From NCBI RefSeq assembly GCF_006345805.1, contig NC_042998.1:68510001-68574000 (forward strand): 64,000 nt of DNA, read 5' to 3'. Both the position numbers and the translations under genes were made by a program. Of this stretch, positions 31,138 through 60,350 are shown piece by piece. The first letter of the stretch is position 1; each line of letters starts with the position of its first letter. The DNA is from Octopus sinensis. Taxonomy: Eukaryota. Under the pieces are notes generated by a model. It did not search any database. It had not been told where the DNA came from and saw only the letters and a program-made list of their open reading frames with translations.

Positions 31138-31630
31138 ATGAAAGCGACTTTCTTTGGTGTCTTTGCTTTATGTTTGATAGTTTGTTTGTCAGCCACAAGT
31201 GCAGCTCCGGTTGACCCATCGGAAGATGCATCAAATGGATCCCAACCAATCATTCCTTTACCAAAACCTGTAGCCGCAGGGAAAGCCGAACCTGAACCCG
31301 AACCCGAACCCAAGACAACCGTCGACCCCGAAACTCTCCCCATCTCTGTAAAATCTGGTTCGGCTAGTCTTACCTGGCTACCCGAAGCAGATCGCAGAAT
31401 TGTCGATCTTAATTGGTATGTTGACCATCTGACAAGGAAGAACCATGCTCTTAGACTGAAATTTGAAAAATTCGAAGAAATTTTTAAAAGTCTTCATGAT
31501 GAGGAAAAACAAATGTCTGAGGAATTGCATCGTTGGAATATGGGATTATTTTTTCCTGGAATGGCCCATGTTCACGAAACGATTGGCATTACAGGTAACA
31601 TTTTAAACAAGGTGGGAGCAAAAGTCGAAG
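31138..31630 (+). CDS. Putative variable first exon A of a secreted fibrinogen-domain protein (signal peptide, Pro/Glu-rich linker, coiled-coil-like segment)
   Basis: ATG 31138, MKATFFGVFALCLIVCLSATSA signal-like peptide, 164 codons +1 nt, donor G|GTAAGT (phase 1); (ATT)n microsatellite follows the donor. Confidence 0.75.
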
Positions 31631-31661
31631 GTAAGTTTCATTTCAAATATATACATACATA

Positions 31662-31723
<62 letters not shown>

Positions 31724-32326
31724 TATTACTAGTACTACTACTCTGTATCGGAGATGGTGAACAACAGCGTCGTTATGTATATGTTGCATGTCTTCAACTA
31801 TTCGGTTGCTGGTTCATAGCTTTTCTGACGATCGGAGTAAGGAGGAAGTTTGTGTAAAATGAAGCAGAACAATGATTTGTCTATCTATACATACATAGAC
31901 ACCTTTACACAAATGTCATTCACTGTATATACATACTCAGAGGCACGCATTCATACATACATATCTATCTATCCATCCATCCATCCATCCATCCGTCCGT
32001 CCATCCGTCCGTCCGTCCGTCCGTCTGTCTGTCAGTCTCTCTCTCTCTCTCTAATATATATATACACACACACATGCATACATACATTTACATATATATG
32101 CGTACGTGCATGCATGCATACATAAACCGATACTTTGGTGTTTCTGTCCACCTGCAGCCGTGATAATAATGATATCTCACATAGAAAGAAGGTCCCAGGT
32201 TTTGGAAGGAGAGGCTACGGGTGATAAATGGAAGGTAATTTATTTTATCGACCCCCTAAAAAGAACGACAGAGTTACTTTTGCTAAGTCGAACGATTGAT
32301 TTCTGTATAGTAGTTTGGAAGCTGTA

Positions 32327-32357
<31 letters not shown>

Positions 32358-33499
32358 GTGTTTGTGCGAGTGCATGTATATTGTATATTTGTGTTTTCGT
32401 ATGTTGTTGTAATTGATGTTTAACCCTAGGTAGACTCACATAAAATAACAAACTTATGATCAAAAAAAAAAAAAAAAAAAATTCCAGCTTTGACCATCCC
32501 AATAATAATATTTTTCAAGCCACAAGACGGCAAGTTAGCAGAAACATTAGCACGCCGGGTGAAATGCTTAGCGCTATTTCGCCCGTCTTTATGTTCTGAG
32601 TTCAAATTCAGCTGAGGTCGACTTTGCCTTTCATCCTTTCGTGGTCGATAAATTAAGTAGCAGTTGCGTGCAGAGGTCGATCTAATCGACTGGCCCCTTC
32701 CCCCAAAATTTCGGGCCTTGTGCCTAGAGTAGAAAAGAATATTTTTCAAGTCATGTGAAGGGGAACGGGGTACCCAGGTTTTACATGGCCACGGTACTTG
32801 GTGTTATAACAAAGAAGGGCACCAACCCGCTGCCATCGAATTACGATGAAAAGCATTTTATCCATGGCCCCTTAAAATGACGATGGTAATGTTTATTTAA
32901 ATTAATATTATTTTCTATTATGAACTGAAGCCATTCTGGGACACCACCTTGAAGTGTTTAATTCGCACAAACCGACCCCAGGACTTATTTAAATCTAGTA
33001 CTTGATTTACAACTATCCTTCGCCGAAGCACCAATATTTTGGGATATAAACAAACCAACATTGGTTTCAAGCGGTGTGGGGGAGACAGACACAGACACAT
33101 ACATACATATGCATTTTTTATATATGCTGGGTTTCTGCACAGTTACAATTTACTATATTAATTCACAGGGCTATCGTAAAAGACACTTTCCCAAAGTACC
33201 GTGCAGTGGGACTGAACCTGAAACTACACGGTTGCAAAGCGATCTTAGCCATATATCTTTTTTTTTTGTTGTTTTTACATTTTTAGTTTTATATTTTTAA
33301 GATCGTAAGGAAATCTTACTGTTATTTCTAGCAGATGAAGCGGCCATGTAGAGGCACAGTGATGTGGAAAACTGGGCGTTGCAGGCAAAACCAAAAGTGG
33401 GTAGAGTTATGACTGACAGATGAGACTGATTCTGACAGGTGGGGATTGATTGTGATAGACGGCGATTGATAAAGGATCTGAAAAAAAACTGTGAATTAA

Positions 33500-33866
33500 C
33501 GGTGGGCGGGAAGAAGACAGGCGGTCTTGAGGATGCTGGAAGTAGGTAGCAGTGAGGGAGCGGGAATGGGGGGGTTGTGTTGTGTGCCCAAAACTCTGAA
33601 ACCAACCAGCCAACCAGCCAAACAGCCAGCCAATCACATTTCGTGTCTGTCTGTCCGCCAGTCTGCCTGTACGTCCGTAGGATTTGTCTTGTTGCCGGTC
33701 TGCCTGGCTCAGCCCTTGCCTTCTGTTCTACCGATTCGAAACCTGGCTAGCTAGAGCCGGCTACACTAAACAAACCCACGTACACAGCAAGGAGAATAGA
33801 ACTGGTACAACAACAAATAATAATAATAATAATAACAAGAACAACAATTTTTTTAAAAAAAGTGAA
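33500..33866 (+). promoter_or_regulatory. Promoter-like / 5' UTR region upstream of exon B
   Basis: GGGCGG at 33504, CCAAT at 33630, locally GC/CpG-rich and free of recognisable SINEs. Confidence 0.4.
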
Positions 33867-34395
33867 ATGTCGCGAAGGTCTTTCTCGCTTTTCCTGCTTC
33901 TGGGATCGCTGATGTTTATTGTTGTTGCCCTGTTGGGGACAGTTTCTGCCGATGATGACGATGACCCTTCGAAAGTGGCCGCCAAAGAAGCCGCCGCAGG
34001 TAGCGATTCCTCTGAAGAAGACGATTCCGATGATGATGACGATTCCGATTCCGATGACGATGATGATGATGACAGTAGTGAAGAAGATGATAATTCCAGC
34101 GAAGTAAAAACAGGTGGGTTACAACCTTGCAGACTTACTCACCTTCTCCGGAGACTGGACAAAGTCTGCCCCAAAATCCGGGATGACGAAATCAAAGTTC
34201 TGGAAGATACCATTGAAGGCATTGCCGGCAATATGAAAGCAATTGATGATATCATTAAACAAGGAGAAGAAAGTCAAAACCTGAAAGAAGATATTTCTCA
34301 AATATGGAAGGACTTCCGAGGACCGTCTGTCTCAGTTTTACCGGATGACACTCACCTGAATGTGGTTAATATATCGGTACCTGGAGAGCTGTCAG
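33867..34395 (+). CDS. Putative variable first exon B (signal peptide, poly-Asp/Ser tract, PC-x12-C, coiled-coil-like segment)
   Basis: ATG 33867, MSRRSFSLFLLLGSLMFIVVALLGTVSA signal-like peptide, 176 codons +1 nt, donor CAG|GTGAG (phase 1). Confidence 0.75.
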
Positions 34396-34635
34396 GTGAG
34401 CACCATTTTAGGTTTTTTTAAAAACTTTTATTGTTGTTCACCTTCAAAACTGTTTCTTTGGAAATGGTGAAGGAATCGTAGTGAAAGGGAGGCGGGGAAG
34501 TAATCTGTTTATTGTCTTTTCGACCTGCTAGAAATAACAGAAAAAATTCCCTCAAGCTAACTTTAGCCAACCTTTTCCTCTCTGCAACACAATCGCTTTC
34601 AACTGAAGTGACATTTGGTTATGTAGTGTGGTGCG

Positions 34636-34716
<81 letters not shown>

Positions 34717-58330: not shown

Positions 58331-58355
58331 CTCCTTTTGTGCTAATATACTAGTA

Positions 58356-58401
<46 letters not shown>

Positions 58402-58674
58402 GAGTGAGAGAGTGACGCGTGCCATCAAAGTGACACCGAGGTAAAATATACGAAGCACAGTATACCCATCATGACTACACGTACGATACAGGCACAGCAG
58501 GTACATGCATCGCAACCATATTTGCGCGACATGCTGCTCAAGATAAACAGCGCATGACCTTGCAGGTGGAGTCCAGTTATAATAATAATAATAATATAAT
58601 AATAATAATAATGATACAGTAAATATTCTGCTCAATACCACAGATTTGCTTGTCAGTTATTTGACCTTAACCAT

Positions 58675-59106
58675 TTGAGCATGTCCCTTAGTGGCTGACG
58701 ATACGTGCATCTCTGATCACGAGCAGAAGTAGTGGGGGAGCATCATAGCCATGTGTTGAAAGGAATTCTTGGAGGTTTGGATGATTCACCTTTGGAAACA
58801 TGGGTGTTTCGTTCATCATCCTTAAATAACTGTTATTCAAGAACCTATTGAGCGGGATGGGCTACTCGACCTGAAGAAAATTCTAACTGGGCCCCACCTC
58901 CAAGGTCATGCGCTGTTTATCCTGATATGAGATCACCATGTCGCGTACATATGGTTGTGATGCATGTGCCTGGTGTGCCCTTATCAGACGGGTAGTCATG
59001 ATGGGTATATTGGGCTTCGTATATTTTACCCCAGTGTCACTTTGATGATATGCACTGCTCTCTCACTCAATAATAATAATAATGATGATGATGATGACTA
59101 TGATGA

Positions 59107-59195
<89 letters not shown>

Positions 59196-59591
59196 TTGAG
59201 TGAGAGAGCACTGCATACCATCAAAGTGACACTGGGGTAAAATATACGAAGCCCAATATACCCATTATGACTACCCGTCTGATAAGGGTACACCAGGCAC
59301 ATGCATCACAACCATACGTGCGCGACATGGTGATCTCATATCAAGATAAACAGCGCATGACCTTGCAGGTGGGGCCCAGTTAGAATTTTCTTCAGGTCGA
59401 GTAGCCCATCCCGCTCAATAGGTTCTTGAATAATAGTTATTTAAGGATGATGAACGAAACACCCATATTTTCAGAGGTGAATTATTCAAACCCCAAAGAA
59501 TTCCTATCAACACACGGCTATGATACTCCCCCACTACTTCTGCTTGTGATTAGAGATGCACATATCGTCAGCCACTAAGGGACATGTTCAA
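58675..59591. repeat. Two 396-bp copies of a non-autonomous element in inverted orientation around a microsatellite loop
   Basis: 58675-59070 (-) and 59196-59591 (+); a third partial copy lies at ~58400-58580. Confidence 0.85.
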
Positions 59592-59608
59592 CTACTAGTA
59601 GTAGTATT

Positions 59609-59667
<59 letters not shown>

Positions 59668-59848
59668 CAAACTTCACTCTTTTGTGTGCTGTATTTCGTC
59701 TTTTGATTTAGTGCACAATGTCTTGGCCCCTCTAACCAATAAAGGGAGCCATCATCATCATTATTATTGTTACTGTTGTTGTTTATTTATGCTATTAAAG
59801 AACTTACCATAAACCTAATTGTGTTTTATTTTCTCTTTTATTCTTCAG

Positions 59849-60350
59849 ATCTTTCGATGAATACCTTTCTGGCTTCGGCAATTTCTCAGGAGAATTCTTC
59901 GTTGGTTTAGAAAATCTTCATCGTATGACCCTCAGTCAGTCCTACACTCTACGAGTTGACGTCAAAAGCGCCGCTGGCAAATGGTATTTTGCTGTGTTCA
60001 ACAATTTTGCAGTGTCTGATGAGACTGACCAATTCCGTCTCAAATTAGGCAACATGACAGCTAGCAATACCGATGACGTTATGGATCAATCACGTGACAA
60101 ACCCTTCAGTACTTATGATCGTGACAACGACGATTGGTCAGGTGGTAACTGCGCTCAACATTTCCGAGGCGGATGGTGGTCGGGTAACTGTATCACGAAT
60201 CTCAACCAAATGTGGTGCAGCAACGGCTGTTTGAGATGGGGTGACACCCGCGTGGTCTCTTCTATAATGCGCATTCGACCGACATCCACCGCTGATCCTG
60301 ACGATATGACTGAAACCCCTAATCCAGTCGGTTTCTCAATCAAAGCATAA
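59849..60350 (+). CDS. Fibrinogen C-terminal (FBG/FReD) domain, terminal exon
   Basis: TTCTTCAG acceptor (phase 2, completes AGA); SFDEYLSGFGNFSGEFFVGLENLHRMT...FSTYDRDNDDWSGGNCAQHFRGGWWSGNC...MRIRP...KA*. Confidence 0.95.

What the first reader, a model, noticed from the sequence alone, without database searches (positions are those of the whole stretch)
31138..60350. Candidate 'variable first exons + constant fibrinogen domain' locus: three different secreted chains from one gene
Seen in the sequence: three large exons (31138-31630, 33867-34395, 35628-37119) each begin ATG + hydrophobic signal-like peptide. Each ends one base into a codon (always G) at a consensus donor (GTAAGT, GTGAG, GTAAGT). 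The next recognisable coding exon (48143) has a phase-1 acceptor, so G+AT gives Asp and DCSDAF..., the normal start of an FBG domain, with any of the three. No FBG or other coding exon is visible in the short gaps between A, B and C, and only one FBG exon pair exists in the window. Established: signal + coiled coil + FBG is the architecture of fibrinogen, angiopoietin-like and molluscan FReD proteins, and alternative first exons spliced to shared constant exons are known from vertebrate clustered protocadherins and UGT1A. Inference: this locus yields three isoforms (about 380, 392 and 713 aa) with identical FBG heads on very different stalks. I know of no such arrangement described for a cephalopod FReD.
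Basis: partly seen in the sequence, partly recalled or inferred. Interest (0 to 1): 0.92.

Follow-up and report, generated by a model that had tools for sequence, protein, structure and literature searches.

The report
Three alternative stalk exons, one fibrinogen head
An octopus gene for a secreted fibrinogen-type sugar-binding protein carries three different, evolutionarily conserved starting exons upstream of a single shared head domain, so it probably makes three proteins with one head on three different stalks, although no RNA evidence from this animal could be consulted.

Summary
Exons A (31138-31630), B (33867-34395) and C (35613/35628-37119) each start with ATG plus a signal-like peptide. 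Each ends on a G, one base into a codon, at a consensus donor. The only fibrinogen (FBG) exon pair (48143-48290, 59849-60350) opens with a phase-1 acceptor.

New here:
- A, B and the FBG are single copy in the 2.7-Gb genome.
- Argonauta hians has the same order A-B-C-FBG1-FBG2, with all three donors in the same phase.
- These five blocks are the only unique conserved sequence in the locus.
- A and B are under purifying selection (dN/dS 0.15-0.18, synonymous sites saturated).
- No conserved, usable acceptor leads into B or C.
- A spliced mRNA from a more distant species joins a B-type stalk directly to the orthologous FBG.
- A limpet homologue has the same three-exon plan with one first exon, and its stalk aligns without gaps with exon A right to the exon end.

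Alternative first exons on constant FBG exons is therefore the best reading. It is strong for C, good for B and inferred for A. No transcript of this species could be seen, and public gene models conflict. A, B and C are not detectably similar to each other. Verdict: plausible new variant of a known gene layout, moderate interest.

The parts
30968..31067 (+). Conserved non-coding block 70-170 nt upstream of exon A's ATG; candidate promoter or 5'UTR of isoform A
   Evidence: It is 96% identical between this genome and a second Octopus species (L021), against 58-84% in the flanking non-coding DNA. Short collinear blocks are also seen against Argonauta, with a weak local-alignment z of 3.2.
31138..31630 (+). 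Alternative first coding exon A: signal-like peptide, Pro/Glu-rich stretch, W-x12-W, helical stalk, W-x6-PG linker; ends in phase 1 (G|GTAAGT)
   Evidence: Sequence. Single copy in the genome. Orthologues with the same phase-1 donor occur in Argonauta (G|GTCAGT) and in a second Octopus species (G|GTAGGT). dN/dS is 0.154. The stalk aligns without gaps with the pre-FBG stalk of Patella, at E 6e-5 and 9.6e-5.
33867..34395 (+). Alternative first coding exon B: signal-like peptide, poly-Asp/Ser/Glu acidic tract, P-C-x12-C, helical stalk, W..GP linker; ends in phase 1 (G|GTGAGC)
   Evidence: Sequence. Single copy. The Argonauta orthologue keeps the ATG, the signal peptide and the phase-1 donor, and has a TAA two codons before the ATG. 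dN/dS is 0.175. A B-type stalk (BLASTP E 7e-10) is joined to the FBG in mRNA contig L015/P0001.
35613..37119 (+). Alternative first coding exon C (ATG at 35613 or 35628): signal-like peptide, Glu/Lys-rich repeats, basic KKPKK tract, six PK(V/I)(V/I)TTTT mucin-like repeats, P-C-x12-C, helical stalk; ends in phase 1 (G|GTAAGT)
   Evidence: Sequence. The Argonauta orthologue is annotated as C+FBG (P0029, 790 aa). dN/dS is 0.123. Conservation begins about 50 nt before the first ATG.
37120..48142 (+). Intron between exon C and FBG exon 1 (11 kb). Under the model, the introns used by A and B end at the same acceptor and span 16.5 kb and 13.7 kb.
   Evidence: It holds no unique block conserved with Argonauta, only repeats and reverse-transcriptase fragments.
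48143..48290 (+). Constant FBG exon 1: phase-1 acceptor, phase-2 donor; encodes (D)CSDAF...ENFH(R)
   Evidence: Sequence. It is 92% identical in protein to Argonauta, with dN/dS 0.022. Polypyrimidine content is 0.75, and conservation starts 11 nt before the exon.
48291..59848 (+). Intron inside the FBG domain (11.6 kb)
   Evidence: It is absent from mRNA contig L015, where the two FBG parts abut. It holds only repeats shared with Argonauta.
59849..60350 (+). Constant FBG exon 2 with stop codon TAA at 60348-60350
   Evidence: Sequence. It is 83% identical to Argonauta, with dN/dS 0.053. It lies within the Pfam PF00147 match.
60408..60413 (+). Candidate poly(A) signal AATAAA, 58 nt after the stop
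   Evidence: Read directly from the sequence. Conservation with Argonauta ends at about 60381. Its use is inferred, not shown.

Best explanation
This is one fibrinogen-related (FReD) gene with three alternative first coding exons and two constant exons.

Proposed mechanism:
- Transcription starts upstream of A, B or C.
- The donor of the first exon transcribed is always in phase 1 and always ends on G. It is spliced to the first competent acceptor downstream, which is FBG exon 1 at 48143. Exons B and C have no usable acceptor of their own, so they are removed with the intron.
- This is the logic of the clustered protocadherin and UGT1A loci.
- Each mRNA encodes its own signal peptide and stalk, followed by the same 216-aa FBG head. 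A has a short Pro/Glu-rich stalk without Cys. B has a poly-acidic stalk. C has a long Glu/Lys-rich, basic and Thr-rich mucin-like stalk.
- By analogy with ficolins, angiopoietins and tenascins, the helical part of the stalk would oligomerise the heads. The low-complexity part would decide where or to what the lectin-like head is tethered.

Shown: the exon anatomy; single-copy status; conservation of order, phase, donors and coding constraint in Argonauta; absence of any other conserved exon; a B-type stalk joined to the FBG in a mature mRNA of another species.

Inferred: separate promoters; the A-to-FBG and B-to-FBG junctions in this species; oligomerisation; ligand binding.
For: 1. Anatomy is as described.
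2. The same five blocks occur in the same order in Argonauta hians. The donors are G|GTCAGT, G|GTGGGT and G|GTAAGA, all in phase 1, and the acceptor is tttcag|AT.
3. Between the two species the only unique collinear matches in the locus are A, B, C, FBG1 and FBG2. Similarity stops 8, 3 and 5 nt after the three donors and begins 1 nt before B's ATG.
4. Constraint is coding: pN is 0.21-0.28 against pS 0.66-0.73, giving dN/dS of 0.154 (A), 0.175 (B) and 0.123 (C).
5. No FBG remnants lie between the exons in either species. The FBG, A and B are single copy.
6. No route leads into B or C. Argonauta has an in-frame TAA two codons before B's ATG. All AGs upstream of B or C with a polypyrimidine fraction of at least 0.6 meet a stop in both species. 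Internal phase-1 AGs have a polypyrimidine fraction of 0.65 or less, mostly below 0.3, against 0.75 and 0.9 for the true acceptors.
7. Logan contig L015 (2258 nt) has an uninterrupted CDS in which the two FBG exons abut, so it is a spliced mRNA. Its N-terminus is B-type (BLASTP E 7e-10 against B, 1.4 against A, no alignment with C). Its FBG is the closest relative outside octopods, at 62% identity.
8. The Patella caerulea homologue has the same plan: one large first exon ending K G|GT, then FBG1 and FBG2. Exon A's stalk aligns with the Patella stalk without gaps, at E 6e-5 and 9.6e-5. The distance from the W..FPG motif to the exon end is the same in both.
9. Each first exon has its own conserved upstream block.
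Against: - No transcript of this species, or of any Octopus, could be seen.
- Exact look-ups of the three predicted isoforms, and of the Argonauta and O. vulgaris-variant A+FBG and B+FBG products, found nothing. A profile of exon A found no A+FBG protein among 1.8 billion representatives. Records close to the window appear to be withheld, so this absence is weak evidence.
- Public annotations do not show the model. O. vulgaris has one chimeric A'-B'-C'-FBG' protein. Argonauta has an A+B protein without FBG plus a separate C+FBG protein.
- A, B and C are not significantly similar to each other, so an origin by exon duplication is not demonstrated.
- The AG at 35624-25, two bases before C's second ATG, is in frame, open and conserved. 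It is a formally possible B-to-C acceptor, with a polypyrimidine fraction of 0.5.
- Very short non-conserved 3' exons for A or B would have escaped the comparison.
Confidence: 0.6

Rival explanations
1. Only C, or C and B, is the first exon of the FReD gene. A (and perhaps B) is a separate small gene for a secreted helical protein without FBG. It would end by read-through of the donor, or by splicing to a short, poorly conserved 3' exon.
For: No A+FBG product was found anywhere. Read-through ORFs stop soon after the donor in B (8 codons in Octopus, 2 in Argonauta) and in A of Argonauta and the second Octopus species. The Argonauta annotation contains an FBG-less A/B protein.
Against: The donor GT, its +5 G and its phase are conserved in two to three species although synonymous sites are saturated. 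The residues after the donor are not conserved (GKFHFKY..., GRFHFK*, GQFFFLS*). No other conserved block exists to splice to. A's 3' end is positionally homologous to the end of Patella exon 1, which is annotated as joined to the FBG. A B-type stalk is joined to the FBG in an mRNA.
Confidence: 0.22
2. A, B and C are consecutive exons of one long transcript, using cryptic internal splice sites, as in the public O. vulgaris and Argonauta models. The locus would then give one chain, not three.
For: P0028 (O. vulgaris, 795 aa) joins parts of A, B, C and the FBG. P0003 (Argonauta, 290 aa) joins A to B. In Octopus the frame is open from 33681 to B's ATG, with a phase-1 AG at 33749-50. A phase-1 AG at 35624-25 precedes C's second ATG.
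Against: The two public models use different, non-homologous internal sites. P0028 cuts off the conserved end of the FBG domain. P0003 reads through B's donor into a stop. Both look like single-transcript gene finders forced to absorb extra coding potential. The Argonauta acceptor inside B's signal peptide has no AG at the matching place in Octopus. Argonauta has a stop two codons before B's ATG, and the orthologue of the 33750 AG meets a stop after 4 codons. The ATG and signal peptide of B and C are conserved, which is unexplained for internal exons, and an internal hydrophobic segment would put the disulphide-bonded FBG on the wrong side of the membrane (inference). The mRNA L015 starts with a 71-nt leader and then the B-type signal peptide.
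Confidence: 0.08
3. A and B are decaying remnants of whole-gene tandem duplicates that lost their FBG exons and are not expressed as protein.
For: No transcript evidence for A. The layout could arise from tandem gene duplication followed by loss of the FBG exons.
Against: ORFs, start codons, signal peptides and donors are intact in Octopus, a second Octopus species (exon A only) and Argonauta. dN/dS is 0.15-0.18 while dS is 1.6-2.0. No FBG debris lies between them.
Confidence: 0.03
4. Assembly artefact: collapsed or mis-joined paralogues that each own FBG exons.
For: None found.
Against: A, B and the FBG are single copy in the 2.7-Gb assembly. The same arrangement is present in the independent Argonauta hians assembly and is implied by the O. 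vulgaris model.
Confidence: 0.02

Closest known systems
Variable-first-exon / constant-exon loci of vertebrates (clustered protocadherin alpha and gamma, UGT1A)
   Same: A tandem row of large first exons, each with its own start codon. All end in the same phase at a strong donor. None has a usable acceptor. A single set of constant exons follows, tens of kb downstream (sequence evidence).
   Different: There are only three variable exons. They are not detectably similar to each other, whereas protocadherin and UGT1A variable exons are clear paralogues. Here the constant part is the recognition domain and the variable part is the stalk, the reverse of UGT1A and protocadherin. Promoter choice is not shown.
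Patella caerulea FReD 'hypothetical protein SNE40_020517' (P0002) and its locus
   Same: The same three-exon plan: one large exon (signal, low complexity, helix, W..FPG linker) ending in phase 1 on G, then FBG exon 1 of 49-50 codons and FBG exon 2. The FBG exons are 43-49% identical (tblastn). Its stalk aligns with exon A.
   Different: There is a single first exon. No other signal-bearing ORF lies in the 10-kb intron or in the 4 kb upstream.
Unnamed mRNA P0001 / L015 (Logan assembly of run SRR27980891; species not identified)
   Same: It encodes a signal peptide, an acidic tract, P-C-x12-C, a long helix, a W..YPG linker and then DC...FBG. It is the orthologue of the predicted isoform B. The AF2 model shows a disordered acidic region, one helix at residues 116-159 and a confident FBG domain.
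   Different: It comes from another species (FBG 62% identical). Nothing is known about other first exons there. A search with its FBG found no sister isoform.
Gastropod FREPs (Biomphalaria) and other invertebrate FReDs; vertebrate ficolins, angiopoietins and fibrinogen chains
   Same: A secreted protein with a C-terminal FBG domain behind an N-terminal oligomerising or spacer region. The FBG keeps the FSTxDRDND...NC...GGWW motifs.
   Different: There is no IgSF domain (FREPs) and no collagen-like region (ficolins); Pfam finds nothing in the stalks. Vertebrate fibrinogen's three chains come from three genes, whereas here three chains would come from one gene with an identical head.

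Membership tests
Fibrinogen-related domain (FReD) proteins, Pfam PF00147 | FBG domain scoring above the Pfam gathering threshold | tested here: met
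   PF00147 at E 2.9e-39, 135.6 bits against a cut-off of 22, covering residues 164-334 of isoform A. The domain is split over exons 48143-48290 and 59849-60350.
Fibrinogen-related domain (FReD) proteins, Pfam PF00147 | Secretion signal at the N-terminus | tested here: inconclusive
   Each of A, B and C begins with a hydrophobic core (Kyte-Doolittle 10-residue mean 3.0-3.6) followed by small residues at -3/-1: TSA|A, VSA|D and SYS|Q. No dedicated signal-peptide predictor was available.
Fibrinogen-related domain (FReD) proteins, Pfam PF00147 | N-terminal oligomerising (coiled-coil or collagen-like) region before the FBG | tested here: inconclusive
   The AF2 model of orthologue P0001 gives one 44-residue helix (116-159, block-mean pLDDT mostly 61-79) before the FBG. 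Oligomer state was not tested.
Variable-first-exon / constant-exon gene architecture (protocadherin, UGT1A type) | Several tandem first exons, each with its own start codon, all ending in the phase required by one shared constant acceptor | tested here: met
   for Octopus and for Argonauta. Exon lengths are 1 mod 3, the last base is G, and the acceptor at 48143 is in phase 1.
Variable-first-exon / constant-exon gene architecture (protocadherin, UGT1A type) | Variable exons lack functional acceptors, so downstream ones are skipped | tested here: met
   Tested in silico only. No pyrimidine-rich AG upstream of B or C gives an open frame in either species. Internal phase-1 AGs lie in purine-rich context. 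One weak conserved AG at 35624-25 remains.
Variable-first-exon / constant-exon gene architecture (protocadherin, UGT1A type) | Each variable exon has its own promoter | tested here: inconclusive
   Conserved upstream blocks exist: 96% identity at 30968-31067 between two Octopus species, and Octopus-Argonauta local-alignment z of 3.2, 2.9 and 6.9 for A, B and C. There are no start-site data. A shared non-coding upstream exon with mutually exclusive choice is not excluded.
Variable-first-exon / constant-exon gene architecture (protocadherin, UGT1A type) | Mature transcripts joining each variable exon directly to the constant exons | not testable with these tools
   No RNA data for this species are reachable. 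Indirect evidence only: a B-type stalk plus FBG in an mRNA of another species, and C+FBG in an annotated Argonauta model. Nothing was found for A.
Variable-first-exon / constant-exon gene architecture (protocadherin, UGT1A type) | Variable exons are paralogues of one another | tested here: not met
   hhalign gives E 0.24 (A vs B), 0.24 (A vs C) and 0.61 (B vs C). Only the layout is shared: P-C-x12-C in B and C, W-x12-W in A, then a helix and a W..P(G) linker.
Biomphalaria-type FREPs | One or two IgSF domains N-terminal to the FBG | tested here: not met
   Pfam finds no domain in any of the three stalks at E up to 0.1, apart from sub-threshold low-complexity hits in B.

The most novel reading that the evidence does not exclude
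The three first exons have been kept for the whole time since Octopus and Argonauta split because the three chains work together. The Cys-free A stalk and the two C-x12-C stalks (B and C) would co-assemble through their helices into mixed oligomers. One gene would then build a multi-chain, fibrinogen-like assembly, or a set of combinatorial lectin oligomers, whose tethering (acidic, mucin-like or plain) is set by promoter choice.
Probability: 0.08. Interest if true: 0.8.

Novelty: new variant of a known kind. Interest (0 to 1): 0.5.

Why it matters
If transcripts confirm it, this would be, to my knowledge, an undescribed arrangement for a fibrinogen-related gene. My full-text searches found no report of a FReD gene with alternative first exons.

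- One conserved recognition head would be placed on three unrelated secreted stalks by choice of first exon.
- The arrangement is conserved across octopods. At least one stalk type (B) is shared with a more distant species, and another (A) resembles a limpet stalk.
- It offers a compact model for how invertebrate lectins diversify their context rather than their binding site.
- It also explains why automatic annotation of this locus gives mutually incompatible, chimeric proteins in two public genomes. That is a practical warning for cephalopod gene catalogues.

Tried and rejected
- **Exact look-ups.** The three predicted isoforms, an alternative start for C, an O. vulgaris-variant FBG version of A and B, and the Argonauta A+FBG and B+FBG products are not in the 15-billion-protein collection. 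The tools warn that records near the window's genome may be left out.
- **Search with C+FBG**. It was swamped by low-complexity words. Only 2 hits were scored as significant, and P0001 was missed.
- **Search with the FBG of P0001 inside a padded query,** to catch sister isoforms of 311-989 aa. It returned only P0001 and the two octopod models.
- **Profile of exon A against 1.8 billion representatives.** It found only octopod A exons and one spurious coiled-coil repeat protein.
- **The four Logan contigs carrying exon A of a second Octopus species.** They are collinear with genomic DNA and bounded by microsatellites, so they say nothing about splicing.
- **Paralogy of A, B and C.** Not significant.
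- **Another split-FBG locus in this genome (C11:20.33 Mb).** I checked it for the same layout. It is a different, angiopoietin-like gene with no signal-bearing first-exon array.
- **A minus-strand ORF with a hydrophobic start at 61822.** It is repeat-derived.
- **Literature.** Searches for cephalopod FReDs, LOC115224852, the SRA run numbers, and FReD plus alternative first exons or promoters gave nothing relevant.
- **tblastn of exon B against the Argonauta locus.** It failed, probably because of the composition adjustment for the acidic tract. The exon was found by blastn and by ORF listing instead.

Full report
**1. Observation**

- Exon A runs from ATG 31138 to 31630 and ends ...GTCGAA G|GTAAGT.
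- Exon B runs from ATG 33867 to 34395 and ends ...TGTCA G|GTGAGC.
- Exon C runs from ATG 35628 (a second in-frame ATG lies at 35613) to 37119 and ends ...CATAAA G|GTAAGT.
- All three lengths are 1 mod 3.
- The next coding block starts behind tttcgtttcag| at 48143. G+AT makes Asp and the reading continues CSDAF.... It ends in phase 2 at 48290. It resumes behind ttcttcag| at 59849 and runs to the TAA at 60348-60350.
- The joined products are 380, 392 and 713 aa. The common part is a full FBG domain, Pfam PF00147 at E 2.9e-39. Pfam finds nothing in the stalks.

This is not a chance pattern.
- A, B and C are the only long ATG-initiated ORFs on the + strand of the window that start with a hydrophobic N-terminus and are not microsatellite translations.
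- Two of the three perfect MAGGTRAGT donors on that strand are the ends of A and C.

**2. Not an assembly artefact and not relics**

The window is G000:C2:68,510,001-68,574,000 of a 2.72-Gb assembly with 13,516 contigs.
- Searching that genome with the FBG finds only the two exons here. The next best FBG is 38% identical and lies elsewhere.
- Exons A and B are single copy.
- tblastn at E up to 10 finds no FBG debris between A, B and C.

**3. The same locus in Argonauta hians**

Two annotated Argonauta proteins led to a 33-kb locus, L016.
- It holds, in the same order and downstream of the same RRM-protein gene, an A exon, a B exon, a C exon, FBG exon 1 and FBG exon 2.
- All three donors are in phase 1 on a G: G|GTCAGT, G|GTGGGT and G|GTAAGA. 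The acceptor is tttcag|AT.
- A sensitive blastn of the whole Argonauta locus against the window gives only these five unique, collinear blocks inside the locus. Everything else is repeats.
- Similarity stops 8, 3 and 5 nt after the three donors. It begins 1 nt before B's ATG and about 50 nt before C's first ATG.
- Synonymous sites are saturated (dS 1.6-2.9), yet dN/dS is 0.154 for A, 0.175 for B, 0.123 for C, and 0.022 and 0.053 for the FBG exons.

A and B are therefore protein-coding exons under selection, with selected donor sites. Nothing else conserved lies nearby to splice to. A second Octopus species (Logan contigs L021-L024, 83% nucleotide identity) also keeps exon A and its donor, G|GTAGGT.

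**4. Can A run into B, or B into C?**

- In Argonauta a TAA lies two codons before B's ATG.
- Every AG upstream of B or C with a polypyrimidine fraction of at least 0.6 meets a stop codon, in both species, when entered in phase 1.
Its Argonauta counterpart stops after four codons.
- Phase-1 AGs inside B and C are numerous because of GAA/AAG codons. They sit in purine-rich context: polypyrimidine fraction 0.65 or less, mostly below 0.3, against 0.75 and 0.9 for the two real acceptors.
- One weak candidate survives. The AG at 35624-25, two bases before C's second ATG, is conserved and in frame. Its product would carry C's signal peptide as an internal hydrophobic segment.

The two public models that do join the exons use different, non-homologous cryptic sites.
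- O. vulgaris P0028 joins A1-93, B79-176, C from residue 183 and a truncated FBG.
- Argonauta P0003 joins A to an AG inside B's signal peptide and then reads through B's donor.
- Each model damages a conserved feature.
- I read them as artefacts of gene finders that allow one transcript per locus. This is inference.

**5. Evidence from outside the octopods**

A spliced mRNA with a B-type stalk:
- P0001 (418 aa) comes from a 2258-nt Logan contig of run SRR27980891. It has a 71-nt leader, an uninterrupted CDS and a 930-nt trailer.
- The two FBG exons of the window abut in it at about position 817, so it is a spliced mRNA.
- Its FBG is the closest non-octopod relative of ours, at 62% identity.
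- Its N-terminal 199 residues are specifically B-type: BLASTP E 7e-10 against B, 1.4 against A and no alignment with C. The shared features are a signal peptide, an acidic tract, P-C-x12-C, a helix and a W..YPG linker, followed directly by DC...
- So a B-type first exon spliced directly to this FBG is a real, expressed combination in a related lineage.
- AlphaFold2 on P0001 gives a disordered acidic region, one helix at residues 116-159 and a confident FBG domain.

A limpet homologue with one first exon:
- The Patella caerulea protein P0002 has the same three-exon plan: one large first exon ending K G|GT, then FBG1 and FBG2. It has only one first exon.
- Exon A's stalk aligns with the Patella stalk over 54-57 columns without gaps (BLASTP E 6e-5, hhalign E 9.6e-5).
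- The number of residues from the W..FPG motif to the exon end is identical in both.
- Exon A's 3' end is thus positionally homologous to a first-exon end that precedes an FBG exon.

**6. What is not shown**

- No RNA from this species or genus could be examined.
- No A+FBG protein was found anywhere.
- No sister isoform of P0001 was found.
- A, B and C are not significantly similar to each other. They share only a layout, so their origin by exon triplication is a hypothesis.
- Separate promoters are suggested only by conserved upstream blocks. One is 96% identical at 30968-31067 between two Octopus species. Octopus-Argonauta local-alignment z values are 3.2, 2.9 and 6.9. A shared non-coding leader exon with mutually exclusive choice is not excluded.

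**7. Most likely mechanism**

- There is one FReD gene with three alternative, signal-bearing first exons.
- The donor nearest the cap is spliced to the first competent acceptor, at 48143. Downstream first exons lack acceptors and are removed with the intron.
- The products share the FBG head and differ in stalk. A is short and Pro/Glu-rich, without Cys. B is poly-Asp/Ser/Glu. C is long and Glu/Lys-rich, with a KKPKK tract and six PK(V/I)(V/I)TTTT repeats of mucin type.
- By analogy with ficolins, angiopoietins and tenascins (established knowledge, not tested here), the helix would oligomerise the heads and the low-complexity part would set localisation or matrix attachment.
- My confidence that all three exons are spliced to the FBG is about 0.6. 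By my own estimate it is roughly 0.9 for C, 0.8 for B and 0.65 for A.

**8. Comparison and novelty**

- The layout works like the variable-exon/constant-exon loci of clustered protocadherins and UGT1A. It fails one of their defining features, paralogous variable exons, and it reverses the roles: the recognition domain is constant and the scaffold varies.
- It is a member of the FReD superfamily. It is not a FREP (no IgSF domain) and not a ficolin (no collagen-like region).
- Full-text searches found no description of a FReD gene with alternative first exons, and nothing on this locus.
- I rate it a new variant of a known kind, of moderate interest. It is conserved, tidy and easy to test, but it is unconfirmed at the RNA level and not conceptually surprising.

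Noticed in passing
window 31138-60350; proteins P0028 (O. vulgaris) and P0003/P0029 (Argonauta hians, locus L016): Public gene models of this locus contradict one another. One is a chimeric 795-aa protein made of internal pieces of A, B and C plus a truncated FBG. Another is a 290-aa A+B fusion that reads through B's donor. They are probably annotation artefacts caused by the alternative first exons.
   Followed up: partly
L016 about 15891-15896 (Argonauta FBG exon 1 donor), against window 48291: The intron inside the FBG domain begins with GC (CACAG|GCAAGT) in Argonauta and with GT (CACAG|GTAAGA) in Octopus. It is a GC-AG intron at an orthologous position.
   Followed up: no
window about 144-17910 (+): The upstream neighbour is a multi-exon gene with long acidic tracts (144-695). 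Its exons match the 3' part of an 821-aa RRM-domain protein gene that lies upstream of the Argonauta locus (14560-14910, 16954-17220, 17818-17910). Synteny is therefore conserved.
   Followed up: partly
window 26189-26824 (-); also 19557-20760 (+), 39914-40303 (-), 46582-47124 (+): There are retrotransposon fragments. 26189-26824 matches reverse transcriptase RVT_1 at E 2.6e-9. The others look LINE-like but fall below Pfam thresholds.
   Followed up: partly
many sites, e.g. window 4300-4400, 30560-30625, 43357-43612, 55283-55440, 61975-62460; also L016 4950-5030 and 9094-9233: A short interspersed repeat is present in many copies in both orientations in the window. It is also recognisable in the Argonauta locus, so it is an old octopod SINE-like family.
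   Followed up: no
window 35613 and 35628; L016 10001 and 10016: Exon C has two in-frame ATGs five codons apart (MSVIEM...). Both are conserved in Argonauta, and the surrounding roughly 50 nt of leader (ATGGTGGTGTGGTGG...) is conserved too. Which one is used is unknown.
   Followed up: no
window 31656-31720 and 30183-30470: An (ATT)n microsatellite starts about 25 nt after exon A's donor. (TA)n and (CA)n runs lie 670-950 nt upstream of exon A. The same kinds of repeat bound the Logan contigs of the second Octopus species.
   Followed up: no
exons B and C (window 34110-34165 and 36865-36915) and exon A (31375-31420): B and C both carry P-C-x12-C just before the predicted helix, as does the B-type mRNA P0001. 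Exon A has W-x12-W at the corresponding place and no cysteine at all in the mature stalk. This may bear on whether and how the chains are disulphide-linked.
   Followed up: partly
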